From positions 1 to 64,000 of the IMG/VR virus record IMGVR_UViG_3300034117_002447: DNA of 64,000 nucleotides; one strand, written 5' to 3'. Below are positions 1 through 63,177 of this stretch, piece after piece. The translations under genes were made by a program, and so were the position numbers. The notes beneath the pieces were generated by a model. That model did no database searches and was not told the origin of the DNA. It saw only the letters and a list, made by a program, of their open reading frames with translations. How positions within the stretch are numbered: position 1 is the stretch's first letter; every line of letters begins with the position of its first letter.

Positions 1-308
1 CCTTTCCTGATGGAATCGAAAAGGAGAGAGAGATTGCGAGCCGACTTGCTGAGCTTGACCTACAGGAAAGGCTTGATCAAGGCTTAATTTCTCAAGCTCA
101 ATTCAAAGCAATTTTATTAGATGTTGTTAATCCAGATAAAATGATGAATATTAATTCGCATGCAATCCTATTAGGATACGGCTCAGTTTATAGACGCTCA
201 GATTCTCCCAATATAAACTGGTCCTATGACTCTACCTCAAAACTGTATAAATTCTATGCAGTACAAGACATTATGCCCAACCAAGAACTTACATACTTTT
301 CAAACTAA
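1..308 (+). CDS. SET-domain-like protein, C-terminal part (truncated by window; not in ORF track)
   Basis: Frame from nt 3 reads ...LLGYGSVYRRSDSPNINWSYDSTSKLYKFYAVQDIMPNQELTYFSN*, matching the SET pattern LGYGSxxNHSxxPN...A.rDI..geELT.dY. The stop TAA (306-308) overlaps the ATG of the next gene. Confidence 0.6.
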   Translation, partial: FPDGIEKEREIASRLAELDLQERLDQGLISQAQFKAILLDVVNPDKMMNINSHAILLGYGSVYRRSDSPNINWSYDSTSKLYKFYAVQDIMPNQELTYFSN

Positions 309-1969
309 TGAAGATACAAGAATTCTCATTCCGAAACATTTGTTCATACGGAAATAAATTACAGACGTTTAAATTTACTGACGAGCCTCGACTTGTTCTA
401 GTTCAAGGTAAAAACGGCTCAGGTAAATCTTCAATTTCTGATGCCTTAACTGTTTCTATCTATGGAAAATCGGCAATCCGAAAAACCAAGGAGATTCCTA
501 ATCGTATTAACAAGAATGCCTATACTCAAATTAAATTCTTAACCGATGGTGGTAAATTAATTGATATTGAACGTGGGCTTGAACCAAACTTTTCAAAAGT
601 ATCAGTAGACGGCGCTGAATATAACTTACCGGATAAACGCAGAGTTGATGAGTTCATAGAAGATGAATTAGCCAGAATCCCATTTAACGTATTCTCAAAT
701 ACAATCAGTCTATCAGTAAATGATTTTAAGAGCTTCGTTAAATTAAGTCCAGCAGATAAACGTCAAATTATCGATAAGATCTTTGGACTAGATATAGTTA
801 ATGACATGTCTAAAATCGTGAAAGAAGAATCCAAGAAAATTAAAGGGGATGTTTCTGCCCATGAAACGGCTATTTCAAGTAATCAGAGACTTCTTGAGTC
901 GTCTCTTCTTCAGCTTGAAAATCTAAAAGTTGAAATTGAAACTTCAAATGAGACTCGAATTTCTGAAATTACTGCTCAAATATCTCAATTAGAAATAGAC
1001 AAACAGGCTAAGAGAACTGAAGCAGCTTCTTTTAATACTAAAATAGAGGAAATCCGAACCTCAATCCGAACTAGTCAAGATAGCCAGTCTTCTACTCGTT
1101 TAAATATCTCAGAAATCCAAAAGAAGCTAGATATCTATGCAAAAAATAAATGCCCTCACTGTTTATCTGACTTAACTGACGAATTACACAGCCAAATTAA
1201 AGATAAGTTACAGGCAAAGAAGATTCAACAAGAGTCCCTAATTCCATCGATTACTGAATCGCTTGCAAGTCAGGCGACAGGTCTTAAAAAGATTGAGGAG
1301 TCTCAAAATACAGCAAAGGCCGATTACTATTCAATCGATGCAAATATTACATCTCTTAAGAGAGAACTCTCTGGATTAAAAACGCAAACAGTTAAAACAA
1401 CTGATCATCATTTAGCTGAAGTAATTAAAAACATACAGTCTGAAATTGATGATTCTAGTAAGACCTTAAAAGTTGAGCAAGAAAAGTTAAAAGTTTCGCA
1501 AGAAATGGAAATGATCTTATCGGATAACGGAATGAAACGTATGCTAATGAGTCAAATTATTCCACTATTAAATAAGAAGATCCTAAAAACCGCTAAAGTA
1601 TTAGAATTTAAGTTTTCGTTCGAGTTTGACCTAGAGTTCAATCCGATCATTACTCATTTAGGAATGCAAGTTTCACCAGACTCATTATCTGCTGGAGAAC
1701 AAAAGAAAATGAACTTAATCGTTCTGCTTTGTATACTTGAACTTATTAAACTTAAACATAATAAAGTAAACGTGTTATTCTTAGACGAAGTATTTTCTTC
1801 TCTTGACGTAGACTCTATTTTTAGAGTAGTTGACCTCTTAAAAACTTTCTCAAAGAAGTATAATATGACCGTGTTTGTTATCTCGCATGATCCATTACCT
1901 GAAGAATACTTCGATACTAAGATCCAGGTTGAAAATACTGACCATTTTTCAGATTTAGCTATTGTATAG
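308..1969 (+). CDS. gp46: SbcC/Rad50-like recombination ATPase (T4 gp46-like)
   Basis: Walker A GKNGSGKS, coiled coil with CPHC zinc hook, LSAGE signature, Walker B FLDE, VISHD. Confidence 0.93.
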   Translation: MKIQEFSFRNICSYGNKLQTFKFTDEPRLVLVQGKNGSGKSSISDALTVSIYGKSAIRKTKEIPNRINKNAYTQIKFLTDGGKLIDIERGLEPNFSKVSVDGAEYNLPDKRRVDEFIEDELARIPFNVFSNTISLSVNDFKSFVKLSPADKRQIIDKIFGLDIVNDMSKIVKEESKKIKGDVSAHETAISSNQRLLESSLLQLENLKVEIETSNETRISEITAQISQLEIDKQAKRTEAASFNTKIEEIRTSIRTSQDSQSSTRLNISEIQKKLDIYAKNKCPHCLSDLTDELHSQIKDKLQAKKIQQESLIPSITESLASQATGLKKIEESQNTAKADYYSIDANITSLKRELSGLKTQTVKTTDHHLAEVIKNIQSEIDDSSKTLKVEQEKLKVSQEMEMILSDNGMKRMLMSQIIPLLNKKILKTAKVLEFKFSFEFDLEFNPIITHLGMQVSPDSLSAGEQKKMNLIVLLCILELIKLKHNKVNVLFLDEVFSSLDVDSIFRVVDLLKTFSKKYNMTVFVISHDPLPEEYFDTKIQVENTDHFSDLAIV

Positions 1970-2022
1970 TTAACCTTTTTCCTTTTTTTGAGTATTATAG
2001 TTACTAGTTTAACACAATTAAT

Positions 2023-2913
2023 ATGATTACATTTAAAGGAAAGACTTTCGCTTCATGCTATGAAGACTCCATTAAGTATTTAATGGCTAACGGTCTTGTG
2101 AATAACGCTAGAGGAACTACCAGTAAAGAATTACTAGATGTTGCACTCGAAGTCGAAGATCCAACTCAATGCCTATACCTAAATCAGGCTAGAAGTTCGC
2201 AAATGAAATACATTGCAGCTGAATTCCTATGGTATTACATGGGTCGTAATGATGTAGCGTTTATTTCAAAATGGGCTAAATTCTGGGAAACAATTCAGAA
2301 CACAGACGGCACCGCAAACTCTGCTTACGGTAATCTAATCTTTAAAGAGACAAACTCTCATGATTTGACTCAGTATCAATGGGCAATTCAAAGCCTAATG
2401 AACGATTCGAACACTCGCCAAGCAGTTCTGCACTTCAATAAACCAGTTCACCAGCATTTTTCAAATAAAGATTTTGTTTGTACTATGTACGCAAATCTTC
2501 ATATTCGAAATAATAAACTTTACATGAGTGTTTTCATGAGAAGTAACGATGCAGTATGGGGTACACCAACTGATGTTGCTTTCTTCTGTTCTCTACAAAT
2601 GCAAATCCATTCTCATCTTAAGCAATTCTATCCAGAATTGGAATTAGGATCGTATACTCATGTCGCTAATTCATATCATGTTTACGATAGACACTACGAT
2701 CTAGCTGGCTACATGTTACAAAATGAATTTTCACCAGTAACTTTACCAGCTATCGTATCTGATTTAATCGAAATAGACGGAACTCCTAGTAAAGATTTTG
2801 AAATACTATTTGATTCTATTAATAAACATACAGACGATGTCCTAATTTTTCAAAATGGCGAAGACCTTTTGAAATGGATATTTGAAAAATCTCAAGGAAA
2901 TGTCAACTACTAA
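2023..2913 (+). CDS. Thymidylate synthase superfamily enzyme, dCMP hydroxymethylase-like
   Basis: TRQAV, DFVCT...IR and MRSNDAVWGTPTD motifs. Asp sits at the position of ThyA Asn177. Confidence 0.85.
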   Translation: MITFKGKTFASCYEDSIKYLMANGLVNNARGTTSKELLDVALEVEDPTQCLYLNQARSSQMKYIAAEFLWYYMGRNDVAFISKWAKFWETIQNTDGTANSAYGNLIFKETNSHDLTQYQWAIQSLMNDSNTRQAVLHFNKPVHQHFSNKDFVCTMYANLHIRNNKLYMSVFMRSNDAVWGTPTDVAFFCSLQMQIHSHLKQFYPELELGSYTHVANSYHVYDRHYDLAGYMLQNEFSPVTLPAIVSDLIEIDGTPSKDFEILFDSINKHTDDVLIFQNGEDLLKWIFEKSQGNVNY

Positions 2914-3376
2914 CTCACTATCCGTACAGAGGCAACATAAGGTTGATGTCGCCTACATCAAAATGGCCCAAGTTTGGGCAGAATTATCTCATGCAACTCG
3001 TAAAAAAGTTGGAGCATTAATTGTTAAGAATAACACGATTATTGCAGATGGATTCAATGGTACTCCTTCTGGATTTGAAAATGAATGCGAAGAGGCCGTA
3101 ATGAACGAAGACGGTTCATTTAGAGAATACAAAACAAAATGGTACGTTCTACACGCAGAGTCTAATGCTTTAGCTAAAGTTGCTAAATCTACTCAAAGTT
3201 GCGATGGATCGACCTTATACATAACTTACTCCCCATGTACAGATTGCAGTAAATTAATACTTCAAGCTGGAATAAAAAAAGTTGTTTATCTAGAGGAATA
3301 TCGAGATATTGCTGGACTTGATTTTTTAAGAAGAGCCGGGGTAGACGTTAAAAAAATCAGCCTAGATTCAATATGA
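2900..3376 (+). CDS. cd: dCMP deaminase
   Basis: KVGALIV, GFNGTPSG, HAESNA and PCxxC zinc motifs. ATG at 2900 preferred over TTG at 2882. Confidence 0.92.
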   Translation: MSTTNSLSVQRQHKVDVAYIKMAQVWAELSHATRKKVGALIVKNNTIIADGFNGTPSGFENECEEAVMNEDGSFREYKTKWYVLHAESNALAKVAKSTQSCDGSTLYITYSPCTDCSKLILQAGIKKVVYLEEYRDIAGLDFLRRAGVDVKKISLDSI

Positions 3377-3774
3377 TTGATACAGATGACAGAAGACTTG
3401 AAATCGTTTTCGTAAAAGACCAAAAACAATTTATTCAAACCTTTAGTAAGAAGCAGAAATGCGATTATTTACTAAACGTAAATAAAATAATCAAGGAGAA
3501 ATTTGAACAGGAAATTCTTGTGCCAAATAAGATCCAATCGTTCCTAATTAATTATGAGATTAAGAAATTAATCGATAAAGCAATTAACGTTAGAAACCGT
3601 AAATACAATAGAATCATTTACGTTAATTCTGGACTTAGTGCAAGTAGCGTAAATAATGCTATAAAATTCCTAAATACTGCGTATCAGTCAGTAGAGTTTA
3701 TCCCTCAATTAATAGATGGGGATCTTGAAATTGGAGAATTAACTGGAGTTGAAACAATAAAAAAGGGACTATAA
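3373..3774 (+). CDS. hypothetical protein
   Basis: 133-aa ORF overlapping the upstream stop (ATGA), ending at a terminator. Confidence 0.7.
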   Translation: MIDTDDRRLEIVFVKDQKQFIQTFSKKQKCDYLLNVNKIIKEKFEQEILVPNKIQSFLINYEIKKLIDKAINVRNRKYNRIIYVNSGLSASSVNNAIKFLNTAYQSVEFIPQLIDGDLEIGELTGVETIKKGL

Positions 3775-3790
3775 AGTCCCTTTTCTTTTT
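3759..3790. terminator. bidirectional intrinsic terminator
   Basis: AAAAAAGGGACT-ATAA-AGTCCCTTTT hairpin between convergent genes. Confidence 0.85.
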
Positions 3791-3808
3791 TATTAAGTTT
3801 CTAAAGAA

Positions 3809-4462
3809 TTACATCATTTCGTCTTCTTCTTCGTTCTCTTCTTCTTCGTTCTCGTCTTCTTCACCTTCTTCAGATTCTTCTTCTAAACAAAGTTTTTTAA
3901 CAGCTGCACAAAGTAGATTGCAAACTTCTTCTTTTTCAATTTCCATCTTTTCAGCGATATCTTCGATCATAGCTTCAAGATCTTCTCCGAAATCAGCCAT
4001 TAGATTTTCTAATTGCTCTTCGTCTACTTCAATTTCTTCTACTTCTGCTCCTTCTTCTGGAGTCTCTTCCATTTCTGGAGCTTCCTCTTCAGCTTCTGCG
4101 AACATGTTATAGCCTTCATTTTCGTTTACGAATTGTTCGAAACGTTTAATTTTTCCTTCTTCAACAGCGTCAACTGTTGCGATTGTTGGTTTTGCGTACA
4201 TAGGGTCAAATGGTTTTTTCTTAGCAGTTCTTGAGATTAAGTCACGAGTTACTGCTTTCCACGTCGTGTCATAATTATGATTGAATTTTCCACCTTCAAA
4301 ATCGGCATTTCTGTCGACTACTCGTTGGTATCCATCAAGTGATTTTCTTTTTGATTTATCAAAGTCTTCCTTCTCTTTGGGACCTCCGAATGCAGGCTTC
4401 TTCAAGTCACTGTATCGATCCATAGAAGGATTATCTCTGCGTTTTACGTTAAACATGTCCAT
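3809..4462 (-). CDS. acidic hypothetical protein, possible internal head protein
   Basis: Glu-rich C-terminus; internal KRFEQFVNE motif. Confidence 0.75.
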   Translation of the reverse strand: MDMFNVKRRDNPSMDRYSDLKKPAFGGPKEKEDFDKSKRKSLDGYQRVVDRNADFEGGKFNHNYDTTWKAVTRDLISRTAKKKPFDPMYAKPTIATVDAVEEGKIKRFEQFVNENEGYNMFAEAEEEAPEMEETPEEGAEVEEIEVDEEQLENLMADFGEDLEAMIEDIAEKMEIEKEEVCNLLCAAVKKLCLEEESEEGEEDENEEEENEEEDEMM

Positions 4463-4483
4463 AGTCAGTTAGCGATGATTTTT

Positions 4484-5068
4484 TTATTGTCCGATTCTAG
4501 ATTCAGTGTACATATCCGCTGTGAATTGTGCGGTTAGTTTATAAATACCGTCTCCTGCGTAATCTAGTGCAGTTTCAGTTAATTTATTTGGTCCAATGAA
4601 TACTGGTGAGAACATAAAGTCTCTGTAAATTACACCAGCTCTATTAAATTGCGTTACTTGAATGCTGGCATCCGCGTAGTCAACTTTTAAACCTTGACGA
4701 CCAGTTAATGGATCGTAAATTAAATCTGCCCATGCTCTTAGTGCATTGTAGATGTACATATCATTATTATTGTTTAAGTTAACCTCAAAATCAATATTAA
4801 ACTGATGATACGTCTGAGCTGGTTTAGCTGGAGCATAAGTTCTTTGAGCGAATTTATAGTTCTGCGTAATTACTGCTGAACCTGAACCTGCAAGCTCTGG
4901 TAAACTAGTTACCTTAAGAACGTGTTCAAGCATTAAGTTGTTACCGAAACCTATTTTACCAGCAACTGCTGGTGGAGGAGTAATAATTACCTCAAATTGA
5001 TTAAGGTACAACGGCTCGTACTTTCCAGGACCGGCTGTTGAGTTTTTAAAATGTGGTAGACCTGCCAT
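4484..5068 (-). CDS. gp19: tail tube protein (gp19-like)
   Basis: EP-Y-NQFEV, W.DLIYDP.TG and F.ADMY patterns typical of T4-like tube proteins; 194 aa; late promoter upstream. Confidence 0.85.
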   Translation of the reverse strand: MAGLPHFKNSTAGPGKYEPLYLNQFEVIITPPPAVAGKIGFGNNLMLEHVLKVTSLPELAGSGSAVITQNYKFAQRTYAPAKPAQTYHQFNIDFEVNLNNNNDMYIYNALRAWADLIYDPLTGRQGLKVDYADASIQVTQFNRAGVIYRDFMFSPVFIGPNKLTETALDYAGDGIYKLTAQFTADMYTESRIGQ

Positions 5069-5087
5069 CTTGTCTCTTATTTTTTAG

Positions 5088-6113
5088 TTATTTATTCTTG
5101 TCCGAAGCAACTTGTTTATCGGATGATCCTTCTGATTGAGAAGGTTCCCTTGCTTCAATTTCTTTTTGTATTTGCTTTTGTAAAGCCTTAATTTCAGAAG
5201 TAGTTTTACTTCCCAGTGTAATATTTGTTGCTTTAATAACGTCTGCTATATCTAATTCAGGTTTCTCTTTTGAATATACTGAATTTTGATCAGGCGTAAA
5301 GCTTAATTCGATCGATGGTAATATTTGAGCTAACAAATTTCCACCAAACTTAAATTCCTTTTCGTCAAACTCTGGAAATTCCATTCTAAATGTTCTGCCT
5401 AATAGACCTGACATTGAAATTTCTGCATAAATTTTAGTTTTATTATCAATCGTTTCTCCCGATACTACTTTTGATAGATTATTTGATACTTGATATAGAA
5501 ACTTAACCCCTGCAGAGTAAGCTCCTCTTTCTTGCTGACCTTCTAAAAATCTAAGACGATCTCCTTTAACTACTACTGTGTATGCATAGTCGCTAACTGC
5601 AGCAGTTTCGTCAGGCGTCACATCTGGTACATCAATTTCCTCAGGCTTAGTATCAATAATCGCAGGTAATCCAGGTTCTTCTACCTTAACCAGGTCACCA
5701 CCAGGCGAGTATCCTGCTAATTGTTTAGGAGCGTCTGGCCCAGGAGGTAAAGCTTTTTGAGTTTCTTCATCCTCTTCCTCCTCTTCTCCAGACCCTAACT
5801 GTTTGGGTGCATTTGGCCCAGGAGGTAAAGCTTCAGTAGCCTCATTCTTTTTACTAGATTCACTTGCAATTCGTGCATCAATTATCTTATTGATTTCAGA
5901 TATTAGATCATTGAGTAGAGCCCCTGATGTGTACTTAACATACAATGGAGCTGCATAGGCAGACGTATATTGTAAATCAGGATACACGTCAGTCTCGTGA
6001 ATTTCGATTCCTTGCTTTGTTTGATCCCACTTAGACTGTTGACCTTTCCCTGGATTACTCCAAGTTATGTTAAAGCTAATTAGTGATTCTGATATAACTC
6101 CTTGTGCGCTCAA
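5088..6113 (-). CDS. hypothetical protein with duplicated ALPPGP(N/D)APKQL motif
   Basis: 341-aa ORF (TTG start uncertain) with a 36-nt internal repeat at 5718-5753 and 5796-5831. Confidence 0.7.
   Translation of the reverse strand: MSAQGVISESLISFNITWSNPGKGQQSKWDQTKQGIEIHETDVYPDLQYTSAYAAPLYVKYTSGALLNDLISEINKIIDARIASESSKKNEATEALPPGPNAPKQLGSGEEEEEDEETQKALPPGPDAPKQLAGYSPGGDLVKVEEPGLPAIIDTKPEEIDVPDVTPDETAAVSDYAYTVVVKGDRLRFLEGQQERGAYSAGVKFLYQVSNNLSKVVSGETIDNKTKIYAEISMSGLLGRTFRMEFPEFDEKEFKFGGNLLAQILPSIELSFTPDQNSVYSKEKPELDIADVIKATNITLGSKTTSEIKALQKQIQKEIEAREPSQSEGSSDKQVASDKNK
5089..5095 (-). promoter_or_regulatory. T4-type late promoter ATAAATA upstream of the tail tube gene
   Basis: ATAAATA about 20 nt upstream of the ATG; the motif recurs before about 15 late genes. 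Confidence 0.7.
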
Positions 6114-6116
6114 TTA

Positions 6117-6422
6117 TTATCCTATTTCTTTTTCGCCTTGGAATTCTTTTCCGCGGTTGGATTTTTTCTTAGTTGGATCAACTGGCTTGTAATTTGCCCA
6201 AATCTCATTATAGATTCGGCATGAAGCTCCCATGAAATTGACAATCCCTACGAATTTCTTACGATCTTCGCCCTTCATACGTGAAATTTTCTTTCCGATG
6301 CTACGTGCATCATCTAAATCCAATTCCTCGTCGTCTGATTTTCCAACTAAATCCTTTATAGAATTCTCTTGAATTACGAACTGTTTAAATGGAGTTAGTC
6401 TGTTTTTATTTTTATCTGACAT
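6117..6422 (-). CDS. hypothetical protein, capsid-targeting-like N-terminus
   Basis: RLTPFKQFVIQE motif; operon context. Confidence 0.75.
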   Translation of the reverse strand: MSDKNKNRLTPFKQFVIQENSIKDLVGKSDDEELDLDDARSIGKKISRMKGEDRKKFVGIVNFMGASCRIYNEIWANYKPVDPTKKKSNRGKEFQGEKEIG

Positions 6423-6442
6423 GGTCGAGATTGATTTTTTAA

Positions 6443-6808
6443 TTACTTAGGCATTTTAGCCATGCTAGGCTCAACTTTCTTATTAATAGCATTTCCTTTA
6501 ATAACGATCTTCGCCATTTTAGAATCTACTACTTTATTAGAAGCCGTACCTTTGCTAGTAGGCAATTTAGAAGTTTTAGTATCAACTGTTTTTGTACTAG
6601 TTGTACCTTTACCTTTAGGAAGACTTGCCATTTCAGGTTTAACAGTTTTATTTGAGTTAGAACCTTTACCTTTAGGAAGTTCTTTCATCTCAGCATTAAC
6701 TGACTTGTTAGATTTAGAACCTTTACCCTTAGGAAGATCTGCCATTTCCTGGTTGATCGCTTTTTTCTCTAAAAGAAATTGTGCGTAATTTAAAACGGTG
6801 TTGCTCAT
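6443..6808 (-). CDS. Lys-rich repeat protein, putative DNA-binding internal head protein
   Basis: VLNYAQFLLE N-terminus, then about five 19-aa repeats (MxxLPKGKGS...); own late promoter at 6845. Confidence 0.75.
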   Translation of the reverse strand: MSNTVLNYAQFLLEKKAINQEMADLPKGKGSKSNKSVNAEMKELPKGKGSNSNKTVKPEMASLPKGKGTTSTKTVDTKTSKLPTSKGTASNKVVDSKMAKIVIKGNAINKKVEPSMAKMPK

Positions 6809-6844
6809 TGTGCTTTATTATTTTGTTTATTGTTTTTAGATAGT

Positions 6845-6851
6845 TATTTAT
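6845..6851 (-). promoter_or_regulatory. late promoter ATAAATA
   Basis: Lies between the major capsid terminator and the next gene. Confidence 0.7.
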
Positions 6852-6865
6852 TAGCGATTCTCCTA

Positions 6866-11660: not shown

Positions 11661-14225
11661 GTGAAGCCCATTGCTTTTACCTATTACTCAAATGCAGTCT
11701 CCGATATTTTCTTAAAAAATGTGGAAACATTCCTCTACTATTCAGGAAAATACGACAGCCTAGTCATTTGCTCCGATATACCTTTGCCTAAAACCATAAT
11801 ATCGGCATTATGCGAAATTATTCAAGTGATTAAGATCTCCCCAAACGAGCAATCTATCTCGTTGAAGAAGAAATTTTCAAGTAATTCTAACCCAACTATA
11901 GTTAACCCTTTCATATTAACAGCACTTTCTTATTCAGAAGCATCGGATATTACTGTATTCGACCCCCATGTGTTTTTAATAAAGGATATAGACTTAACCA
12001 ATAATTCCAATCAATTTTTCTTTTCCCAGAACTCATTAATATCTACGAGCTTTTTTAAATTTAAGCCTTCTTCTGAGATTAGTCGGCTTGCTAATCAAAT
12101 TCTAATAAACCAGGATTATACTAACATATCAATAATCCAGGCCTTTAATTTCTTTATAACGAACTCACTAGCCTTTTCTGAAAAGTCGATACGGTCTGAT
12201 CTTTTTATCTTTACCAGACCTAGTGATGAAGTTGAATTAAAGGAAGATAAGATACTCGGCTTTGATTTTTTAAATTTAAGTAGGACTTCACATTTCAAGG
12301 AAATTTCCGGAATTAGAGATAATCATGTTGCCAAAAAGAAAAAGCAGCTACTTGCCTTTATCAAGAAAAAATACCAATACCTAGATCAGTCACTAGTTAC
12401 TGCTACTCAAAATAATGCAGCAGTTCCAATATCTTACGAAAACTTTAAAAAGTATTCAGACAAACTCACCAATACGGTACAGATCAATCTGATCTACACA
12501 AAACAGGTAGCTAATCACGCTAAGAATTTAGAAAAGACCCTAACCGAATTAGGGTTTATTGTAAAGTCTTCAATTAAATCTCCAGGTAGTGCTCTAAACC
12601 CAAATGACCCTAACTTGCATATCGTCATGTGCCCAAATGTATTCACGGATTTCCCAAAGAATTACATAGCCTACCAATTTGAACAAGCCCATTCAAGCTG
12701 GTTCACTAAAGATTACATACACAGGCTAAATTGTGCGATTGAAATATGGGATTATTCAGAATACAATATCAATTATTTCAAAGGAAAATTTGGAAGACCT
12801 CATATATTTGTACCAATCGGTCGAGTTGAACATGATGTTGATATAGTTAACCAAGCTAGAGATATAGATGTCCTGTTTTATGGAGAATACTCAGGCAGCA
12901 GTCGAAGAACTGAATTTCTAGATAGTATGAGAGAGCTTAGGTCCATCAAAGTAGTAGACGGATTTAGCGTACATAAGTTTGGATCAGATATCGTAGATAT
13001 TCTCAAGAGAACTAAAGTTGTACTAAATCACCACTACTACGATAATGGAAATCTTGAAGTAGTTAGAGTATATGAAGCCTTAAGCTACGGGTGTAAAGTC
13101 GTTTCCGAAGTTTCAGTTGATGATAATTACCACGATTTACCGATTTTAAGATATTCCAGTGTTACTGAAGCAGATCGGCTTCTAAAATTGGCACTAGCTG
13201 ATAATCAGGTTCGTGAATTTAACAAAAGTAATAAAGCTGTTATTAAATCAGCGATGAGTCGACTTGGTTTTAATATGCACAATCGAATTGCAGTATTTGC
13301 TCATTATGATGTCCTTAACCAGATCGACGATTATGTAGTTGACTATTTAACTAAACTTAGTAAATTTTGTGACAAAATAATATTTGTGTCTGACGGTAAC
13401 GTAAATCCTTCTGAGCTGGAAAAAATCTCTCATTTAATATCTGATAGTATATGTGGAAGGCACGGTGAATCAAACGATTTAGGTAGTTACAAGAGAGGTT
13501 TCAATTTAATAATTGAAAAGTACAAGTCTGACATTTCTAAAATTGATCAATTTCTTTTTGTTAATGATTCAGGTTATTGTGTGGGCGATCTAACTCCAGT
13601 CTTTGACACTATGACTGGTGCATCCGTTGATGCATGGGCACTATGTGATCATGCGCCCGACCCAAAACTAATAGAGGGCAAGTGCTATTTACAAAGTAAT
13701 TTTTTCTCAGTTAACCGAGCAGTATTTACGGCAAAACCGTTCTCTCAGTTTATGAACAGTATAACAGTTTCTCATAATAAATCAGAAATAGTTGACAAGT
13801 ATGAGCTAGGTTTATCTGAGATGTTAATTAAGAATGGTTATAGGACCGGTTGTTACATAAGCACAGTCAGTCTAGATGAGTACATTAGATCGAATGATAC
13901 TCAATTAACAACTGAGGTCCTTTCGCTACTTTCCGGAAATTATTCAGGCATAACTAGCGATATAATGTCAAGAATATTTCATTCAAAAATAGGAGGAGAC
14001 TATGTCTATTCTGATCATTTTTATACTCTACTAAAAATAGGATTTCCGTTAATTAAATGCTTAGCACTAGTTCCAAATCAGGAAACTGGCCCATATAATA
14101 AACTAATTGACTATTGGAAGCCGATCCTCATTTCTAAATTGGGATCAGCTCAAGTTAATCAAATGCTAACTCATATTTCTAGAATCGGTAAGACTCCGAA
14201 ATCACCTAACAAAAATATACGATAA
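11661..14225 (+). CDS. multidomain glycosyltransferase with C-terminal rhamnan synthesis F (RgpF)-like domain
   Basis: Middle DIDVLFYG...VVLNHHYY..GNLEVVRVYEALSYG (GT-B-like). C-terminal AVFAHYD...DDYVVDYL...NDLGSYKRG...FVNDS...LQSNFF (RgpF-like). Confidence 0.75.
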   Translation: MKPIAFTYYSNAVSDIFLKNVETFLYYSGKYDSLVICSDIPLPKTIISALCEIIQVIKISPNEQSISLKKKFSSNSNPTIVNPFILTALSYSEASDITVFDPHVFLIKDIDLTNNSNQFFFSQNSLISTSFFKFKPSSEISRLANQILINQDYTNISIIQAFNFFITNSLAFSEKSIRSDLFIFTRPSDEVELKEDKILGFDFLNLSRTSHFKEISGIRDNHVAKKKKQLLAFIKKKYQYLDQSLVTATQNNAAVPISYENFKKYSDKLTNTVQINLIYTKQVANHAKNLEKTLTELGFIVKSSIKSPGSALNPNDPNLHIVMCPNVFTDFPKNYIAYQFEQAHSSWFTKDYIHRLNCAIEIWDYSEYNINYFKGKFGRPHIFVPIGRVEHDVDIVNQARDIDVLFYGEYSGSSRRTEFLDSMRELRSIKVVDGFSVHKFGSDIVDILKRTKVVLNHHYYDNGNLEVVRVYEALSYGCKVVSEVSVDDNYHDLPILRYSSVTEADRLLKLALADNQVREFNKSNKAVIKSAMSRLGFNMHNRIAVFAHYDVLNQIDDYVVDYLTKLSKFCDKIIFVSDGNVNPSELEKISHLISDSICGRHGESNDLGSYKRGFNLIIEKYKSDISKIDQFLFVNDSGYCVGDLTPVFDTMTGASVDAWALCDHAPDPKLIEGKCYLQSNFFSVNRAVFTAKPFSQFMNSITVSHNKSEIVDKYELGLSEMLIKNGYRTGCYISTVSLDEYIRSNDTQLTTEVLSLLSGNYSGITSDIMSRIFHSKIGGDYVYSDHFYTLLKIGFPLIKCLALVPNQETGPYNKLIDYWKPILISKLGSAQVNQMLTHISRIGKTPKSPNKNIR

Positions 14226-14228
14226 TAA

Positions 14229-14978
14229 ATGAAACTTGCCATTTTTGCAATAGCATTAGACGAGGAGAGGTATTTAGCTGAATGGCTAGACTACCACAAG
14301 AGATTAGGAGTTACTGACTTTGTCATTTACGATAATTCAGCAAATAACAAACTACGAGACTTTGCCTCAGACTCAGTTAAGATCATCTATTTTCCTGGAA
14401 AAGGGATGCAAATTCCAGCATATAATAATTTTCTAGAAAATTTTGCTAGCGACTTTGACTATGCAATGGCACTCGATATTGATGAGTTTTTAGTAATTCA
14501 TAATGATTTATCAATTAACGAATTCATTCAAACCTACTTAACTTCAGCTGGTGTAGTAATCCATTGGCGATTCTTTGGGTCAAACGGTCATATTCGTTAC
14601 TCAGATCGACCAGTCTTGGAGAGATTCATTAAATGCCAAGACGATTGCTCTGACCATTTCAAAACAATCATCGACTGTAAAAAAGTAGTTAGGTATACAA
14701 ATCCTCACATGCCTGATTTGACAGTCGACGGTGAAATATTCGAGTTAACTGGTGAATTAGTAACAGGTCATGCGAGTCAAATAAATACAACTAGTATTGC
14801 ACAAATCAACCATTATTTTTGTAAATCATGGGAAGAATTCAACTGGAAGATCAATCGAGGCCGCATAACTCTCAATGTTGAACCTAGATCAACTGACGAT
14901 TTCTTTTGGGCGAATAGAAATGACGGTGTAGACAAGTCGGCTCTAAACTTAATAACTAATAAAAAAACTACAAAATAA
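14229..14978 (+). CDS. glycosyltransferase (GT2/GT92-like)
   Basis: DEERYLAEWLDYHKRLGV..FVIYDNS, DIDEF, W..FGSNG, K.I and INHY motifs. Confidence 0.85.
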   Translation: MKLAIFAIALDEERYLAEWLDYHKRLGVTDFVIYDNSANNKLRDFASDSVKIIYFPGKGMQIPAYNNFLENFASDFDYAMALDIDEFLVIHNDLSINEFIQTYLTSAGVVIHWRFFGSNGHIRYSDRPVLERFIKCQDDCSDHFKTIIDCKKVVRYTNPHMPDLTVDGEIFELTGELVTGHASQINTTSIAQINHYFCKSWEEFNWKINRGRITLNVEPRSTDDFFWANRNDGVDKSALNLITNKKTTK

Positions 14979-14980
14979 TA

Positions 14981-15619
14981 ATGTATTTACCAGTACCTTA
15001 CAAAGTTCAGTATGACACACAAAAATTTCCATTTAAGGAAATCGTCGAGTCAATTCTAGAAGTTGATAATCTATCTGAACTGCACAAATTAAAAGACTAC
15101 CTTTTCTTTTCTAGAGAAATGGATCAATCTACTGATTGGCACAAAGCTTATTACTCAAAATTCAGTGAGTTGTTTTACCCAACGTACGTTGAATTAGTTA
15201 AAGAATTAGCGAACTCATTCGAGTATGAATCAATCATTTATCAAAAAATCCCAACGTTTAGAACCCAACTCGTTAATAATTTAGCAGTCGGCGAATGGCA
15301 CAGGGACCGAGCATACAATCACGGAACTTCTGAAGTTAACTTTTGGATGCCATTTACTGATACTAACGAGACCAATACTATTTGGATGGAAAGTTCTGAA
15401 GGAAAGGAAGATTTCATGCCGTATACTGTAAAATACGGAGAAATTTTAGTATTTAATGGAGCTAATCTACTTCATGGAAATAAAACAAACACCTCTGACT
15501 CTACTCGAGTATCAGTTGACTTTAGATTAGTTGATCCAGCTAAATTTATTCCAACTAAAGCAGGCTCAATTAACATGAATTCGTCTTTTGAAGTAGGCGG
15601 ATATTTTGAAAAACTTTAA
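14981..15619 (+). CDS. StrG/PhyH-like 2OG-Fe(II) oxygenase
   Basis: YQ..PTFR, WHRD (HxD), NFWMPFT, LHGN..N.S..TRVS.DFR. Confidence 0.75.
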   Translation: MYLPVPYKVQYDTQKFPFKEIVESILEVDNLSELHKLKDYLFFSREMDQSTDWHKAYYSKFSELFYPTYVELVKELANSFEYESIIYQKIPTFRTQLVNNLAVGEWHRDRAYNHGTSEVNFWMPFTDTNETNTIWMESSEGKEDFMPYTVKYGEILVFNGANLLHGNKTNTSDSTRVSVDFRLVDPAKFIPTKAGSINMNSSFEVGGYFEKL

Positions 15620-31422: not shown

Positions 31423-32031
31423 TTATTTATTAGGCTCTATTCCTAATAATGTATAACACTCGGCATTAAATGAATTAACCGAATCTTCATCAAACTTATT
31501 AAAAACGATGCTTAGTTTGTTATTTTTTTCTGAATTTACAAGATCTTTTACACCAAGCTCAATTAGATGAGCCATTAGTTGCTGTTCTTCTAGTGTAGAA
31601 TGTGCTCCATCCCAAGTATCTTTAACTCTGCTAGAATCACCAGTTTGACCTGCAACTGAAACTACTAACGTTTTTGAATTTGCATATAAATTAGTTTTCA
31701 ATAGAGTTAAGAATTCAAGCTCAGCTTTAGTTCGAGTTAATCTTTTTCTTAAGATTGCCCAAGTGTATGCAGATATGATAGCTCGATCAAATATCCAAAT
31801 TTTATCTGAATATTCAGGTCTAAGATTCATTTCCATAATGGTCATGATATTTCCCAAGCTAAAATAATGAAGACTTGGATCAGTGTCTAATCCAACTAAT
31901 CCTAACGTTTTAATATGATCTGCGAAATAGAATTTGTAGTACTCAATTCTTGGATCATTTGCCTTCTCGATAAATTGATTAATTAAAAATGTTTTGCCAC
32001 AGTGCCTGGCGCCTTCTACGAATAATATCAT
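31423..32031 (-). CDS. P-loop nucleoside monophosphate kinase-like protein
   Basis: FVEGARHCGKT Walker A; IFDRAIIS motif as in dTMP kinases. Confidence 0.75.
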   Translation of the reverse strand: MILFVEGARHCGKTFLINQFIEKANDPRIEYYKFYFADHIKTLGLVGLDTDPSLHYFSLGNIMTIMEMNLRPEYSDKIWIFDRAIISAYTWAILRKRLTRTKAELEFLTLLKTNLYANSKTLVVSVAGQTGDSSRVKDTWDGAHSTLEEQQLMAHLIELGVKDLVNSEKNNKLSIVFNKFDEDSVNSFNAECYTLLGIEPNK

Positions 32032-42494: not shown

Positions 42495-43418
42495 ATGAAT
42501 CGTAAAGTAACAGTAATAGGTGGGGCCGGATTTATCGGATCTCACCTTGTTAAATCACTCGTAGAGCAAGGGTTCCGAGTAACCGTAATCGATAATCTAT
42601 CGACCGGTAAGAAAAGCAACATTAAAAACTTAGCGATTGACCTAAGAGTCTACGATATTACAGGGGATCCCAAGAAGATCGCCGCCATCATTAAAGGTTC
42701 AGAATGCGTATTCCATTTAGCCGCATTAACTTCTGTCCAGGAGTCATTAGAATCACCTACTCTATATAATTTAGTAAATGTAATAGGAACCTCAAACGTG
42801 CTTGAAGCGTGTCGAATCGCTGGTGTATCGGAATTAGTGTTTAGCTCAACTAGTGCAGTATACGGAAACACTGAGTTATTTCCAACTAATGAATCTGTAC
42901 CGCTTGATCCAATTTCAACCTATGCGTTAACTAAACAGATTGGGGAAAATTATTGCAAATTATATTCTTCAATTTACAGAATAAAAACGACGTGCCTTAG
43001 ATATTTCAATGTTTACGGTCCAAATTCAAATCCTGACAGTTCATACCGCTCAGTCATTCCAATATTTTTAGAAAAAGCTAAGGCTGGCAAACCTTTACCA
43101 ATCACAAATGACGGAGAACAGCGAAGAGATTTTATTCACGTATCAGATGTAGTTAGAGCAAATATTGCTGCATTACACTCACCAGCATACAATGCGCTCG
43201 CTAACGCTTCAGATAAGTATCACCGAATTATTAATATAGGAAGTGGAGAAAATATCAGCGTAAATCAAATCGCTGAAATGGTTGGCGGAAAAACGGTAAA
43301 TGTAGGTTTTAGATTAGAGCCGAAGATTAGTTTAGCTGACGTCACTGCCGCTAAATCGTATCTTGATTGGAACCCGTTAATTAAATTAGAAGATTGGCTT
43401 AAAGGTCAAACATTGTAG
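42495..43418 (+). CDS. NAD-dependent nucleotide-sugar epimerase/dehydratase (GalE-like SDR)
   Basis: GGAGFIGS, HLAA, SSTSAVYG, YALTK, LRYFNVYG and RDFIHV motifs. Confidence 0.92.
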   Translation: MNRKVTVIGGAGFIGSHLVKSLVEQGFRVTVIDNLSTGKKSNIKNLAIDLRVYDITGDPKKIAAIIKGSECVFHLAALTSVQESLESPTLYNLVNVIGTSNVLEACRIAGVSELVFSSTSAVYGNTELFPTNESVPLDPISTYALTKQIGENYCKLYSSIYRIKTTCLRYFNVYGPNSNPDSSYRSVIPIFLEKAKAGKPLPITNDGEQRRDFIHVSDVVRANIAALHSPAYNALANASDKYHRIINIGSGENISVNQIAEMVGGKTVNVGFRLEPKISLADVTAAKSYLDWNPLIKLEDWLKGQTL

Positions 43419-62634: not shown

Positions 62635-63177
62635 TTAGAATGGGCTGATTAACTCTTTAAACGGGGTTCCCAATTGATCTTTATCCGAAATGATAGGATT
62701 TTCAATTTCCCAATCAATCGCTAAGTCCGCATCATTCCATAATATACAGCCTTCATGTTCTTTTGAATAACCGTTTGTGCATTTATAGGAAAAAATAGTG
62801 TCGTCTTCTAGGCTAACGAAGCCATGCGCAAAGCCTGGTGGAATCCAAAGTTGATTGCGATCAGTCGTATTTAATACAACTTGAAAGGATTTACCGTAGC
62901 TTGGAGAGTCTCGACGAATATCTACCGCAACATCCAACACGCTTCCTGTAATTACCTGAACCAATTTTCCTTGATCAAACGGTGGAGCTTGAAAATGCAA
63001 TCCACGAAGGACTCCTTTTTTGGATCTAGATAAATTATCCTGAACAAATGAATGCTCATTAAGAAATTCAGAATATTTCAGCTGATTAAACGATTCTAGA
63101 AAAAATCCTCTTTCATCGCCAAACACGGATGGATAAACTGATATAAGCCCGTTAGGAAATTCTTGTACAACTTTCAT
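62635..63177 (-). CDS. rmlC: dTDP-4-dehydrorhamnose 3,5-epimerase
   Basis: FGDERGFF, VQDNLS.S..GVLRGLHFQ, DVAVDIR, WIPPGFAHGF and YKCT motifs. Confidence 0.95.
   Translation of the reverse strand: MKVVQEFPNGLISVYPSVFGDERGFFLESFNQLKYSEFLNEHSFVQDNLSRSKKGVLRGLHFQAPPFDQGKLVQVITGSVLDVAVDIRRDSPSYGKSFQVVLNTTDRNQLWIPPGFAHGFVSLEDDTIFSYKCTNGYSKEHEGCILWNDADLAIDWEIENPIISDKDQLGTPFKELISPF

What the first reader, a model, noticed from the sequence alone, without database searches (positions are those of the whole stretch)
2023..3376. ThyA-family enzyme with the cytosine-specifying Asp, suggesting modified cytosine in the phage DNA
The sequence DFVCT...IR...MRSNDAVWGTPTD aligns with T4 gp42 dCMP hydroxymethylase (DFMCT...IR...MRSNDVVFGFRND) rather than ThyA (PC...RSCDVFLGLPFN). 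The Asn of ThyA versus Asp of gp42 at this position determines dUMP versus dCMP specificity (established). This predicts 5hmC or 5mC synthesis (inference). It overlaps a dCMP deaminase gene, which competes for dCMP, so flux partitioning or an unusual pathway is possible. The glycosyltransferases and NMP kinase in the window are candidate partners.
Basis: partly seen in the sequence, partly recalled or inferred. Interest (0 to 1): 0.68.

Follow-up and report, generated by a model that had tools for sequence, protein, structure and literature searches.

The report
Phage dCMP hydroxymethylase with partner deaminase
An uncultured 271-kb freshwater phage carries a thymidylate-synthase relative with every residue that makes phage T4's enzyme turn dCMP into 5-hydroxymethyl-dCMP, plus the helper genes T4 uses, so its DNA very probably carries 5-hydroxymethylcytosine, which is a known trick in a new phage lineage.

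Summary
ORF 2023-2913 is a ThyA-family protein (Pfam 77.7 bits; AlphaFold pLDDT 92.6, thymidylate-synthase fold). It has Asp184 at the E. coli N177 position.

Its signature at E. coli positions 143/147/169/177 is D/T/D/D. This matches T4 gp42 and differs from ThyA (L/H/D/N), the Xp12 dCMP methylase (N/P/D/D), the RB69 5-hydroxy-dCMP synthase (E/T/N/D) and the SPO1 dUMP hydroxymethylase (D/N/D/N). All T4 residues shown by mutagenesis to be needed for hydroxymethylation are present, and they are invariant or nearly so in 120 relatives. Ser174 and Arg132 point to a deoxyribose substrate.

The same 271-kb genome encodes:
- a gp56-like dCTPase;
- a canonical ThyA;
- the adjacent S-TIM5/T4-type dCMP deaminase;
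- a thymidylate-kinase-fold P-loop protein.

This is essentially T4's scheme for replacing cytosine, so no unusual pathway is needed. The "overlap" is 14-32 nt and is absent in relatives. The gene adjacency is conserved in 79 of 79 related loci and is a published signature of cytosine-modifying phages.

No α/β-glucosyltransferase homologue was found. The window's rhamnose and glycosyltransferase genes remain untested candidates.

Verdict: a new member of a known kind, with the chemistry predicted and not measured.

The parts
2023..2913 (+). ThyA-family gene, 296 aa. Predicted deoxycytidylate 5-hydroxymethyltransferase (5hm-dCMP synthase). Key residues: E67, W88, I91, S100, Y102, R132, D150, C153, T154, R173, S174, D176, D184, H219, Y221.
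   Evidence: Pfam PF00303 at 77.7 bits. Best solved-structure sequence hits are MilA (9e-18) and T4 dCH (1e-13), ahead of ThyA (1e-10). The residue signature is identical to T4 gp42 and invariant or nearly so in 120 homologues. AF2 pLDDT is 92.6, and Foldseek gives MilA TMq 0.79 and T4 dCH TMt 0.75.
2900..3376 (+). dCMP deaminase. The longest ORF starts at TTG 2882; the likely start is ATG 2900.
   Evidence: Pfam PF00383 at 2.6e-22 and PHROG 174 at 1e-49. Best solved relative is the cyanophage S-TIM5 dCMP deaminase 4p9c (1e-40), then T4 cd 1vq2 (1e-22). It lies adjacent to the ThyA-like gene in 79 of 79 assessable related loci.
3373..3774 (+). Conserved 133-aa ORF of unknown function. It is the last gene of the same-strand run, and its start overlaps the deaminase stop (ATGA).
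   Evidence: No Pfam or PHROG hit. The Atlas look-alikes are uninformative. It is present directly after the deaminase in the related loci.
3759..3786 (.). Two-way terminator-like hairpin that closes the SbcC / ThyA-like / deaminase / orf133 run, facing the convergent structural genes.
   Evidence: Consensus scan found a 10-12 bp stem followed by a T-run on both strands. This is a pattern match only.
1970..2022 (+). 53-nt intergenic region upstream of the ThyA-like gene, with one sigma-70-like match (TTAACC-17-TATTAT).
   Evidence: The number of promoter-like hits in the region is no higher than in shuffles, so this is weak.
308..1969 (+). gp46/SbcC-like recombination nuclease subunit, the conserved upstream neighbour. 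It places the pair at the end of the T4-like replication/recombination module.
   Evidence: PHROG 77 at 7.6e-78. The order PolB-exo ... UvsX ... DnaB ... gp47, gp46, ThyA-like, deaminase is kept in relatives.
31423..32031 (-). 202-aa P-loop protein with a thymidylate-kinase-like fold. Candidate dNMP kinase for 5hm-dCMP (inference).
   Evidence: Walker A motif at residues 7-14. AF2 pLDDT 89. Foldseek top hits are thymidylate kinases at E 5.6e-6, TM 0.55-0.64. Atlas look-alikes include 'thymidylate kinase family' clusters. It is conserved in 5 of 5 related genomes. It is not detectably related to T4 gp1.
11661..15619 (+). Glycan gene cluster: RgpF-like 854-aa protein (11661-14225), GT2/GT92 GT-A glycosyltransferase (14229-14978) and PhyH-like dioxygenase (14981-15619). 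These are candidate DNA-decorating enzymes only.
   Evidence: Pfam hits. The RgpF-like slot is kept but hypervariable among relatives, at 28-45% identity against 70-84% for the neighbouring protease. Nothing links the cluster to DNA.
42495..43418 (+). NAD-dependent sugar-nucleotide epimerase/dehydratase. Possible supplier of an activated sugar.
   Evidence: Pfam PF01370 at 3.5e-62 and PF16363 at 8.6e-51.
62635..63177 (-). dTDP-4-dehydrorhamnose 3,5-epimerase (RmlC).
   Evidence: Pfam PF00908 at 8.1e-66.

Best explanation
ORF 2023-2913 encodes a folate-dependent dCMP hydroxymethylase that works like T4 gp42.

Proposed catalysis: Cys153 attacks C6 of dCMP. Asp184 reads and protonates the cytosine N3/N4 face. 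Glu67 opens 5,10-methylene-THF. Asp150 and Ser100 then hold a water molecule that attacks the exocyclic methylene. This replaces the hydride transfer seen in thymidylate synthase, so the product is 5-hydroxymethyl-dCMP.

Proposed pathway in the genome:
- A gp56-like dCTPase (G000 262967-263446) removes dCTP and returns dCMP.
- The hydroxymethylase takes part of that dCMP.
- The adjacent dCMP deaminase takes the rest to dUMP for the phage's own canonical ThyA (G000 150321-151487).
- A kinase phosphorylates 5hm-dCMP. This may be the thymidylate-kinase-fold protein at 31423-32031, or a host enzyme.
- The split B-family polymerase incorporates the product, giving DNA in which C is largely or wholly replaced by 5hmC, possibly decorated further.

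What is shown and what is inferred:
- Shown: family membership, fold, residue signature, its conservation, gene neighbourhood, and presence of the dCTPase, ThyA and deaminase.
- Inferred: substrate, product, the identity of the kinase, the extent of replacement, and any glycosylation.
For: Family and fold:
- Pfam thymidylate synthase.
- AF2 pLDDT 92.6; best structural matches are MilA and T4 dCH.

Residue signature at E. coli ThyA positions 143/147/169/177:
- Window: D/T/D/D, the same as T4 gp42.
- E. coli ThyA, RB69 td and the phage's own second ThyA: L/H/D/N.
- Xp12 dCMP methylase: N/P/D/D.
- RB69 gp48 5-hydroxy-dCMP synthase: E/T/N/D.
- SPO1 gp29 and PhiW-14 dUMP hydroxymethylases: D/N/D/N.
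The meaning of these positions comes from PMC13326640, PMC8670742 and PMC6400193.

Mutagenesis-defined T4 residues: S94, Y96, D145, C148 and D179 correspond to window S100, Y102, D150, C153 and D184. Across 120 homologues S100, Y102 and D184 are invariant and D150 and C153 are present in 119.

Sugar specificity: the deoxyribose markers Ser167 and Arg126 are present, where MilA has Ala and Lys.

Tree: the ML tree puts the clade beside T4 gp42, Xp15 and RsoM2USA, all with Asp177, at 93/89 support.

Pathway genes:
- A gp56 homologue at E 1.5e-22, 37-39% identical over its full length to Straboviridae dCTPases.
- No trimeric dUTPase and no MazG.
- A canonical ThyA at 314 bits, and no ThyX.
- A deaminase closest to the allosteric S-TIM5 and T4 dCMP deaminases.

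Conservation:
- The ThyA-like/deaminase pair is kept in 79 of 79 loci.
- The dCTPase is kept in the two closest relatives searched.
- The canonical ThyA is found in two of the five related records.

Closest cultured homologues sit beside known hypermodification genes: a beta-glucosyltransferase in Lactobacillus phage ATCCB, and a carbamoyltransferase plus deaminase in Xp15.
Against: - No biochemistry and no nucleoside analysis. The phage is uncultured.
- Residue rules for product choice rest on few characterised enzymes. The 2026 discovery that gp42-like proteins can be flavin hydroxylases shows how the family can surprise.
- By raw phmmer score the protein is nearer to the SPO1 dUMP hydroxymethylase (73.5 bits) than to T4 gp42 (54 bits). 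Deep tree branches are long and not strongly supported.
- Arg127 is Gln, as in SPO1 gp29.
- No gp1-type dNMP kinase and no alpha/beta-glucosyltransferase homologue were found.
- Relatives at 62-65% identity show no gp56-like gene in records that are 67-84% complete, so full replacement of C may not hold across the clade.
Confidence: 0.72

Rival explanations
1. The enzyme is a dCMP methyltransferase of the Xp12/PaMx74 type. The DNA would carry 5-methylcytosine, and the adjacent deaminase would convert 5-methyl-dCTP or 5-methyl-dCMP into thymidine nucleotides.
For: - Asp at position 177 is shared with Xp12.
- An engineered N177D/N229D thymidylate synthase methylates dCMP (cited in PMC8670742).
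- Several ThyA homologues found beside deaminases in metaviromes made 5mdCMP when tested (bioRxiv 10.1101/2024.12.05.627091).
Against: - Position 143 is Asp, as in all hydroxymethylases aligned. It is Asn in Xp12, and D145N abolishes T4 dCH activity (PMC6400193).
- Position 147 is Thr, not Pro.
- The genome has its own canonical ThyA, so a 5mC-to-T bypass is not needed.
- The deaminase is far closer to the S-TIM5 and T4 dCMP deaminases (1e-40, 1e-22) than to the PBCV-1-type enzyme (5e-17) named as the nearest structure to the 5mC-selective deaminase.
- phmmer gives 41 bits against Xp12, compared with 54-73 bits against hydroxymethylases.
Confidence: 0.1
2. The enzyme is a flavin-dependent 5-hydroxy-dCMP synthase like RB69 gp48, DLP3 gp80 and RL38J1 gp216. 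The window's glycosyltransferases would then attach sugars directly to 5-hydroxycytosine.
For: - It shares Asp177, an acidic residue at 143 and Thr147 with RB69 gp48.
- The window encodes sugar-nucleotide enzymes and glycosyltransferases.
- The activity was found in diverse IMG/VR ThyA homologues (PMC13326640).
Against: - The only diagnostic residue reported, Asn at position 169, is Asp here and in 120 of 120 relatives.
- Gly173 and Tyr209 are kept, where RB69 gp48 has Val and Phe.
- phmmer gives only 27 bits against RB69 gp48.
Confidence: 0.05
3. The enzyme acts on uracil nucleotides, either as a dUMP hydroxymethylase like SPO1 gp29 or as a second thymidylate synthase. The Asp would be a neutral variant.
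For: - The highest pairwise phmmer score among the references is to SPO1 gp29.
- It shares Asp143 and Gln127 with SPO1 gp29.
- Some database records annotate close homologues as dUMP hydroxymethyltransferase.
Against: - Asp at position 177 is invariant in 120 of 120 relatives. It is the experimentally established cytosine determinant (Graves 1992, Hardy 1992 and Liu & Santi 1992, as cited in PMC8670742 and PMC13326640).
- Position 147 is Thr, not Asn as in both dUMP hydroxymethylases.
- A canonical ThyA already exists in the genome.
- The homologue annotated as a dUMP enzyme also has D/T/D/D, so that label is probably wrong.
Confidence: 0.04
4. The enzyme makes 5hm-dCMP, but the neighbouring deaminase works on the modified nucleotide. 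The phage would then also, or mainly, make 5-hydroxymethyl-dU for its DNA.
For: Seven deaminases found next to Asp177 ThyA homologues produced 5hmdU when supplied with 5hmdC nucleotides in vivo, and 5mC/5hmC selectivity is scattered across the deaminase family (bioRxiv 10.1101/2024.12.05.627091). The pairing is strictly conserved here.
Against: - The deaminase is close (about 1e-40) to the S-TIM5 dCMP deaminase.
- A canonical ThyA needs the dUMP that an ordinary dCMP deaminase supplies.
- No 5hmU-specific follow-up genes were seen.
Confidence: 0.07

Closest known systems
Phage T4 gp42, deoxycytidylate 5-hydroxymethyltransferase (PDB 1B5E/6A9B), with its partners gp56 dCTPase, cd dCMP deaminase and td thymidylate synthase
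   Same: - Same fold.
- Same residues at every position known to matter: T4 E60, S94, Y96, R123, D145, C148, T149, S169, D171, D179, H216 and Y218.
- Same set of partner genes in the genome: gp56-like dCTPase, dCMP deaminase and canonical ThyA.
- Both lie in a T4-type replication/recombination module.
   Different: - Only about 23-24% identity.
- 296 aa against 246 aa, with a C-terminal extension that superposes on MilA's and has no counterpart in T4 dCH.
- Arg124 is Gln here.
- The gene is fused into an operon with the deaminase, whereas in T4 genes 42, cd and td are scattered.
- No gp1 kinase and no alpha/beta-glucosyltransferase homologues.
- The host phage is a 271-kb freshwater virus whose capsid protein is nearest to LR756500 and the Lak megaphages.
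MilA, CMP 5-hydroxymethylase of mildiomycin biosynthesis (PDB 5JNH/5B6D)
   Same: It is the best sequence hit (9e-18) and the best structural hit (TMq 0.79) among solved structures, including the C-terminal extension. It has Asp at positions 143 and 177.
   Different: MilA's ribose-preference residues, Ala176 and Lys133', are Ser174 and Arg132 here. These are the states of the deoxyribose-specific enzymes (PMC5175136). MilA belongs to a bacterial antibiotic pathway, not to a phage DNA pathway.
Asp177 ThyA homologue plus dCMP deaminase pairs of modified-cytosine metavirome contigs (MetaGPA, Yang et al. 2021; 5mC-selective deaminase preprint 2024), and cultured examples such as Xanthomonas phage Xp15
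   Same: The gene pair, its orientation and the Asp177 criterion are the same. Xp15 has the same D/T/D/D signature with a deaminase immediately downstream. The published IMG/VR screen used the same filter that this locus passes.
   Different: In Xp15-type contigs a carbamoyltransferase accompanies the pair, and in Xp12-type contigs the product is 5mC and no second ThyA is present. Here there is no carbamoyltransferase, while a gp56-like dCTPase and a canonical ThyA are present.
RB69 gp48 / DLP3 gp80 5-hydroxy-dCMP synthases (Lee et al., NAR 2026)
   Same: They are ThyA homologues of T4-like phages with Asp177 and an acidic residue at 143, and they are accompanied by sugar-nucleotide and glycosyltransferase genes.
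   Different: The diagnostic D169N change is absent here (Asp176). Gly173 and Tyr209 are retained. Sequence similarity is much weaker, at 27 bits.

Membership tests
Thymidylate synthase / pyrimidine hydroxymethylase superfamily (Pfam PF00303) | Profile match above the curated threshold | tested here: met
   77.7 bits against a cut-off of 24.3, covering profile positions 3-251 of 266.
Thymidylate synthase / pyrimidine hydroxymethylase superfamily (Pfam PF00303) | Thymidylate-synthase fold | tested here: met
   AF2 pLDDT 92.6, pTM 0.92. Foldseek gives 396 PDB matches at E <= 0.001; every entry shown in the listing is MilA, T4 dCH or a thymidylate synthase.
Thymidylate synthase / pyrimidine hydroxymethylase superfamily (Pfam PF00303) | Catalytic Cys146, Glu58, Tyr94, phosphate-binding Arg21/Arg126'/Arg166, and His207/Tyr209 for the 3'-OH (E. 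coli numbering) | tested here: met
   All are present (C153, E67, Y102, R, R132, R173, H219, Y221). Only Arg127 is replaced, by Gln, as in SPO1 gp29.
dCMP hydroxymethylase (T4 gp42 type, EC 2.1.2.8) | Asp at the ThyA-N177 / T4-D179 position (cytosine specificity) | tested here: met
   D184, invariant in 120 of 120 homologues.
dCMP hydroxymethylase (T4 gp42 type, EC 2.1.2.8) | Acidic residue at ThyA-L143 / T4-D145, plus Ser94 and Tyr96, which position the substrate water | tested here: met
   D150, S100 and Y102; present in 119-120 of 120 family members. Their roles come from PMC6400193.
dCMP hydroxymethylase (T4 gp42 type, EC 2.1.2.8) | Asp retained at ThyA-D169 / T4-D171 | tested here: met
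   D176; 120 of 120.
dCMP hydroxymethylase (T4 gp42 type, EC 2.1.2.8) | Deoxyribose markers Ser167 and Arg126' | tested here: met
   S174 and R132.
dCMP hydroxymethylase (T4 gp42 type, EC 2.1.2.8) | Catalyses dCMP + CH2-THF + H2O -> 5hm-dCMP + THF | not testable with these tools
   This needs an enzyme assay, or in vivo expression followed by LC-MS.
T4-type cytosine-replacement pathway | Phage dCTPase (gp56) that removes dCTP from the pool | tested here: met
   G000 262967-263446 matches T4 gp56 at 1.5e-22 and is 37-39% identical over its full length to Straboviridae dCTPases. The Pfam dUTPase_2 match is borderline, 22.8 against 22.9.
T4-type cytosine-replacement pathway | Separate thymidylate synthase and dCMP deaminase for dTMP supply | tested here: met
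   Canonical ThyA at 314 bits with L/H/D/N. Deaminase adjacent.
T4-type cytosine-replacement pathway | gp1-type dNMP kinase that accepts 5hm-dCMP | tested here: inconclusive
   No gp1 homologue; best E 0.22. A conserved thymidylate-kinase-fold protein is a candidate, but its substrate is unknown.
T4-type cytosine-replacement pathway | alpha/beta-glucosyltransferase acting on 5hmC in DNA | tested here: not met
   No match to T4 beta-GT or to the Lactobacillus phage ATCCB beta-GT. T4 alpha-GT was not used as a query. The window's GT-A and RgpF-like enzymes have unknown targets.
T4-type cytosine-replacement pathway | 5hmC, or a derivative of it, in virion DNA | not testable with these tools
   All public runs holding this DNA are kept only as assembled contigs.
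Canonical thymidylate synthase ThyA (EC 2.1.1.45) | Asn177, Leu143 and His147 | tested here: not met
   Asp, Asp and Thr at these positions.
dCMP methyltransferase (Xp12 type) | Asp177 with a non-acidic residue at 143 (Asn in Xp12) and Pro at 147 | tested here: not met
   Asp177 is met, but position 143 is Asp and 147 is Thr. The signature rests on one reference sequence.
5-hydroxy-dCMP synthase (RB69 gp48 type) | Asn at ThyA-D169 | tested here: not met
   Asp176. The rule comes from PMC13326640.
CMP hydroxymethylase (MilA/BcmA type) | Ala at ThyA-S167 and Lys at Arg126' | tested here: not met
   Ser174 and Arg132.

The most novel reading that the evidence does not exclude
The 5hmC made by this pathway may be further decorated with a glycan not yet described on DNA, for example a rhamnose-containing one. 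The phage's own RmlC, NAD-dependent epimerase/dehydratase, RgpF-like rhamnosyltransferase-type protein and GT-A glycosyltransferase would build it. The RgpF-like slot is hypervariable among relatives, which would fit an arms race over DNA decoration. My evidence does not exclude this. It does not support it beyond co-occurrence in one genome, and the same genes could instead glycosylate virion proteins or host envelope.
Probability: 0.1. Interest if true: 0.7.

Novelty: new member of a known kind. Interest (0 to 1): 0.36.

Why it matters
If correct, a widespread and recurrent clade of large freshwater phages replaces cytosine with a 5-hydroxymethylcytosine-type base. The clade was seen in lake metagenomes from 2016 to 2024 and has hundreds of homologues in public data. 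This has several consequences:
- It would affect how these viruses are recovered and quantified by sequencing protocols that are sensitive to base modification.
- It would shape which host restriction, CRISPR and modification-dependent defences matter in lakes.
- It extends the T4 paradigm to a lineage whose capsid is nearest to LR756500 and the Lak megaphages.
- It gives a compact three-gene operon (hydroxymethylase, deaminase, unknown 133-aa protein) and a non-gp1 kinase candidate that are easy to test by the published co-expression and LC-MS assay.

It does not reveal a new principle.

Tried and rejected
- **Relatives from the look-up of encoding contigs as search handles (L006, L007, L038, L039).** These loci are not held, so three searches covered only LR756500. 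LR756500 has the ThyA-like gene but gave no match to the dCTPase, the kinase or a canonical ThyA. The tool warns that an empty answer shows nothing.
- **T4 partner queries.** phmmer of T4 gp1, beta-GT and Dam against all genome ORFs found nothing. Neighbours of the closest cultured homologues (ATCCB beta-GT and UDP-Galp mutase, Xp15 carbamoyltransferase, RsoM2USA and AB434P2 neighbours) also found nothing, apart from the deaminase.
- **Kinase search by profile and sequence.** PHROGs on ten unassigned window ORFs, looking for a kinase, gave no family for 31423-32031. A PDB sequence search gave nothing either. Only the fold search was informative.
- **The 133-aa ORF.** The Atlas look-alike search gave only low-overlap, unrelated clusters.
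- **Sequencing runs.** Runs were sought in the hope of raw long reads that could show base modification. All holders are kept as contigs only. The metatranscriptome contigs laid on 1500-7400 come from relatives 90-95% identical and cover mostly the structural genes. Small pieces touch 1877-2109, 2861-3052 and 3084-3734. These are compatible with transcription across the ThyA-like/deaminase junction but prove nothing, because DNA can be present in such libraries.
- **Palindrome statistics as indirect evidence of modification.** The result is suggestive but does not discriminate; see Noticed in passing.
- **Conserved gene overlap.** Rejected, because relatives have a gap instead.
- **An alternative genetic code, as in Lak phages.** Rejected, because all genes read through under table 11.
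- **The exhaustive representative-protein search.** Not used, because family scans and the word search settled the protein.
Full report
**What is there**

The window is the first 64 kb of a single 271,290-bp IMG/VR virus contig, CheckV 100%. Three other assemblies of 270-271 kb carry a 100% identical copy of the gene at different contig positions. This fits one circularly permuted genome of about 270 kb.

On the + strand, a gp46/SbcC-like gene (308-1969) is followed by four features:
- a 296-aa ThyA-family ORF (2023-2913);
- a dCMP deaminase (longest ORF 2882-3376);
- a conserved 133-aa ORF (3373-3774);
- a two-way terminator-like hairpin (3759-3786), facing convergent structural genes.

The finding's coordinates therefore span two genes. 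The quoted 32-nt overlap depends on a TTG start. The first ATG (2900) gives 14 nt, and in relatives the deaminase begins after the ThyA-like stop. The adjacency itself is kept in 79 of 79 related IMG/VR loci where it can be assessed.

**The enzyme**

The ORF matches Pfam Thymidylat_synt at 77.7 bits. Among solved structures its best sequence matches are:
- MilA CMP hydroxymethylase, 9e-18;
- T4 dCMP hydroxymethylase, 1e-13;
- thymidylate synthases, 1e-10 and weaker.

An AlphaFold2 model built on 34 family members has pLDDT 92.6. Its best Foldseek match is MilA over nearly its whole length (TMq 0.79), including a C-terminal extension that T4 dCH lacks. T4 dCH gives TMt 0.75.

**Residue tests**

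I fetched reference genes from annotated records and aligned them: E. coli thyA, T4 gp42, RB69 td and gp48, Xp12, SPO1 gp29 and PhiW-14. The literature gives four diagnostic positions in E. coli numbering:
- **177:** Asn for uracil, Asp for cytosine.
- **143:** a bulky hydrophobic residue for methyl transfer, Asp or Glu for hydroxymethylation.
- **169:** Asn marks the recently discovered flavin-dependent 5-hydroxy-dCMP synthases.
- **147:** the second most discriminating position between modified-cytosine and unmodified contigs.

These rules come from PMC13326640, PMC8670742 and PMC6400193.

Signatures at 143/147/169/177:

| Enzyme | Signature |
|---|---|
| E. coli ThyA, RB69 td, the phage's own second ThyA | L/H/D/N |
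| T4 gp42 | D/T/D/D |
| Window protein | D/T/D/D |
| Xp12 dCMP methylase | N/P/D/D |
| RB69 gp48 | E/T/N/D |
| SPO1 gp29 and PhiW-14 dUMP hydroxymethylases | D/N/D/N |

The T4 residues whose mutation abolishes or cripples hydroxymethylation are S94, Y96, D145, C148 and D179. They correspond to window S100, Y102, D150, C153 and D184. Trp83 of ThyA is replaced by a small hydrophobic residue (I91), as in T4 (V85).

MilA's two ribose-preference residues (Ala and Lys) are Ser174 and Arg132 here, the deoxyribose state (PMC5175136).

Across 120 metagenomic homologues of 56-92% identity:
- positions 169 and 177 are invariant;
- positions 143, 146 and 147 are identical in 119.

The closest cultured-phage homologues also read D/T/D/D: Lactobacillus phage ATCCB, Ralstonia RsoM2USA, Agathobaculum AB434P2 and Xanthomonas Xp15. 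Two of them sit beside known hypermodification genes: a beta-glucosyltransferase and UDP-galactopyranose mutase in ATCCB, and a carbamoyltransferase and deaminase in Xp15.

**Phylogeny**

A maximum-likelihood tree places the window clade plus LR756500 next to T4 gp42, RsoM2USA and Xp15. ThyA, Xp12, SPO1, PhiW-14 and RB69 gp48 fall on the other side. The separating branch has 93/89 support, the deep terminal branches are very long, and the tool warns of long-branch effects.

By raw phmmer score the protein is nearer to SPO1 gp29 than to T4 gp42. The tree is therefore compatible with the assignment but does not carry it. The residue evidence does.

**Rest of the pathway**

- **Thymidylate synthase.** The genome holds a second, canonical ThyA (G000 150321-151487, 314 bits) with three 30-40-aa insertions, and no ThyX.
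- **dCTPase.** A homologue of T4 gp56 lies at G000 262967-263446, directly upstream of the exonuclease half of a split B-family polymerase. On the circular map this is about 10 kb upstream of the ThyA-like gene. It is 37-39% identical over its full length to Straboviridae dCTPases. No trimeric dUTPase and no MazG were found.
- **Deaminase.** It is closest to the cyanophage S-TIM5 dCMP deaminase (1e-40) and to T4 cd (1e-22). The PBCV-1-type enzyme, which resembles the 5mC-selective deaminases, scores lower at 5e-17.
- **Kinase.** No gp1 homologue exists. A conserved 202-aa P-loop protein (31423-32031) folds with pLDDT 89 into a thymidylate-kinase-like structure, with E 5.6e-6 and TM 0.55-0.64. 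Its substrate is unknown.
- **Glycosyltransferases.** No beta-glucosyltransferase or carbamoyltransferase homologues were found.
- **Ribonucleotide reductase.** Genes for both subunits lie upstream of the dCTPase.

Conservation in relatives: the dCTPase is present in the two closest long contigs (82-84% identity), but no match was found in three more distant, incomplete ones. Canonical ThyA is present in two of the five.

**Interpretation**

The set of hydroxymethylase, dCTPase, deaminase and thymidylate synthase is T4's scheme.

The pairing of a dCMP deaminase with an Asp177 ThyA homologue is also already documented. It occurs in 70% of deaminase-bearing modified-cytosine contigs against 6% of unmodified ones. 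The same authors screened IMG/VR with a filter that this locus passes.

I therefore rate the finding as a new member of a known kind. The prediction of 5hmC over 5mC or 5hoC is the added value. Its weakness is that the product rules rest on a handful of characterised enzymes.

**Candidate decoration**

The window carries the following genes:
- an RgpF-like 854-aa protein;
- a GT2/GT92 GT-A glycosyltransferase;
- a PhyH-like dioxygenase;
- an NAD-dependent sugar epimerase/dehydratase;
- RmlC.

GT-A enzymes are known to glycosylate 5hmC in phage DNA (bioRxiv 10.1101/2023.12.21.572611).

The RgpF-like slot is retained but evolves much faster than its neighbours. Nothing ties these genes to DNA, and they lie inside the structural module. 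I treat DNA glycosylation as possible and unsupported.

**Ecology**

Fourteen DNA runs labelled lake water or freshwater metagenome (2016-2024) hold the stretch essentially completely. The major capsid protein is nearest to the uncultured 462-kb phage LR756500 (37%) and to the Prevotella Lak megaphages (32-38%). The genome reads normally under table 11.

**Limits**

No tool here can see a modified base. All public data for this phage are assembled contigs. Everything about substrate, product, extent of replacement and kinase identity is inference from homology and residue rules.

Noticed in passing
whole genome G000:C1 (window included): The NdeI site CATATG is completely absent: 0 observed against 29.6 expected from a maximal-order Markov model. 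It is partly depleted in relatives with 75-82% ThyA-like identity (30 against 72) and not depleted in more distant ones (119 against 134). GATATC, GGTACC, CTATAG and GGATCC are about half of expectation. Most four-base palindromes containing C (GATC, GGCC, AGCT, GTAC, CATG, CTAG, TCGA, ACGT) sit at 0.99-1.02 of expectation, though CGCG (0.71) and GCGC (0.90) are depleted and CCGG (1.19) and TGCA (1.16) enriched. NdeI is one of the few C-containing enzymes reported to cut fully glucosyl-5hmC T4 DNA (PMC7653180). The pattern would fit a modified genome that still has to avoid the sites its modification does not protect, but it could equally reflect one host strain's restriction system.
   Followed up: partly
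window 36862-38487 (+) and G000:C1:263465-264847 (+): The B-family DNA polymerase is split into an exonuclease half and a polymerase half. Each matches T4 gp43, and they are encoded about 44 kb apart on the circular map. The same exonuclease-half gene is seen in relatives.
   Followed up: partly
G000:C1:150321-151487 (-), outside the window: [quoted passage not shown] In the alignment, Trp83 appears as Asp next to the first insertion. Relatives have open frames of 401 and 429 aa at the corresponding match. Its neighbours are a 2OG-Fe(II) oxygenase (151883-152596) and an Fpg/Nei-family DNA glycosylase (152947-153753).
   Followed up: partly
window 50252-50824, 63199-63672; G000:C1:63687-66200: An RNA-repair-type cassette: an HAD_SAK_2 domain protein, a cyclic-phosphate-processing receiver domain (cREC_REC), an RNA ligase with a PHA02142 OB domain, and a CCA-adding/poly(A) polymerase head-domain protein. 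An RmlC gene (62635-63177) lies among them.
   Followed up: no
window 11661-14225 (+): The RgpF-like gene occupies the same slot after the DnaJ-like gene in several relatives, but it is only 28-45% identical where the adjacent prohead protease is 70-84% identical. This makes it a fast-evolving glycan locus.
   Followed up: partly
window 3373-3774 (+): A 133-aa ORF with no recognisable family always follows the deaminase and is probably co-transcribed with the hydroxymethylase and deaminase. It could be an unrecognised part of the nucleotide pathway.
   Followed up: partly
window 39610-40116 (+): A TnsA-like endonuclease N-terminal domain protein (Pfam 6.4e-22) lies between the primase-like gene and the T4-type portal gene. 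It may be a mobile or homing element.
   Followed up: no
L036 (Agathobaculum phage AB434P2, OP172633.1) 2914-3576: This record annotates its ThyA homologue as deoxyuridylate hydroxymethyltransferase, but the protein has Asp at position 177 and the D/T/D/D signature. The label is probably wrong, and the enzyme is more likely cytosine-specific.
   Followed up: partly
G000:C1:73440-74523 (-), outside the window: A 138-aa AAA_33 P-loop kinase-like protein lies next to a ClpP protease homologue. It is a second, weaker kinase candidate (best T4 gp1 E-value 0.22).
   Followed up: no
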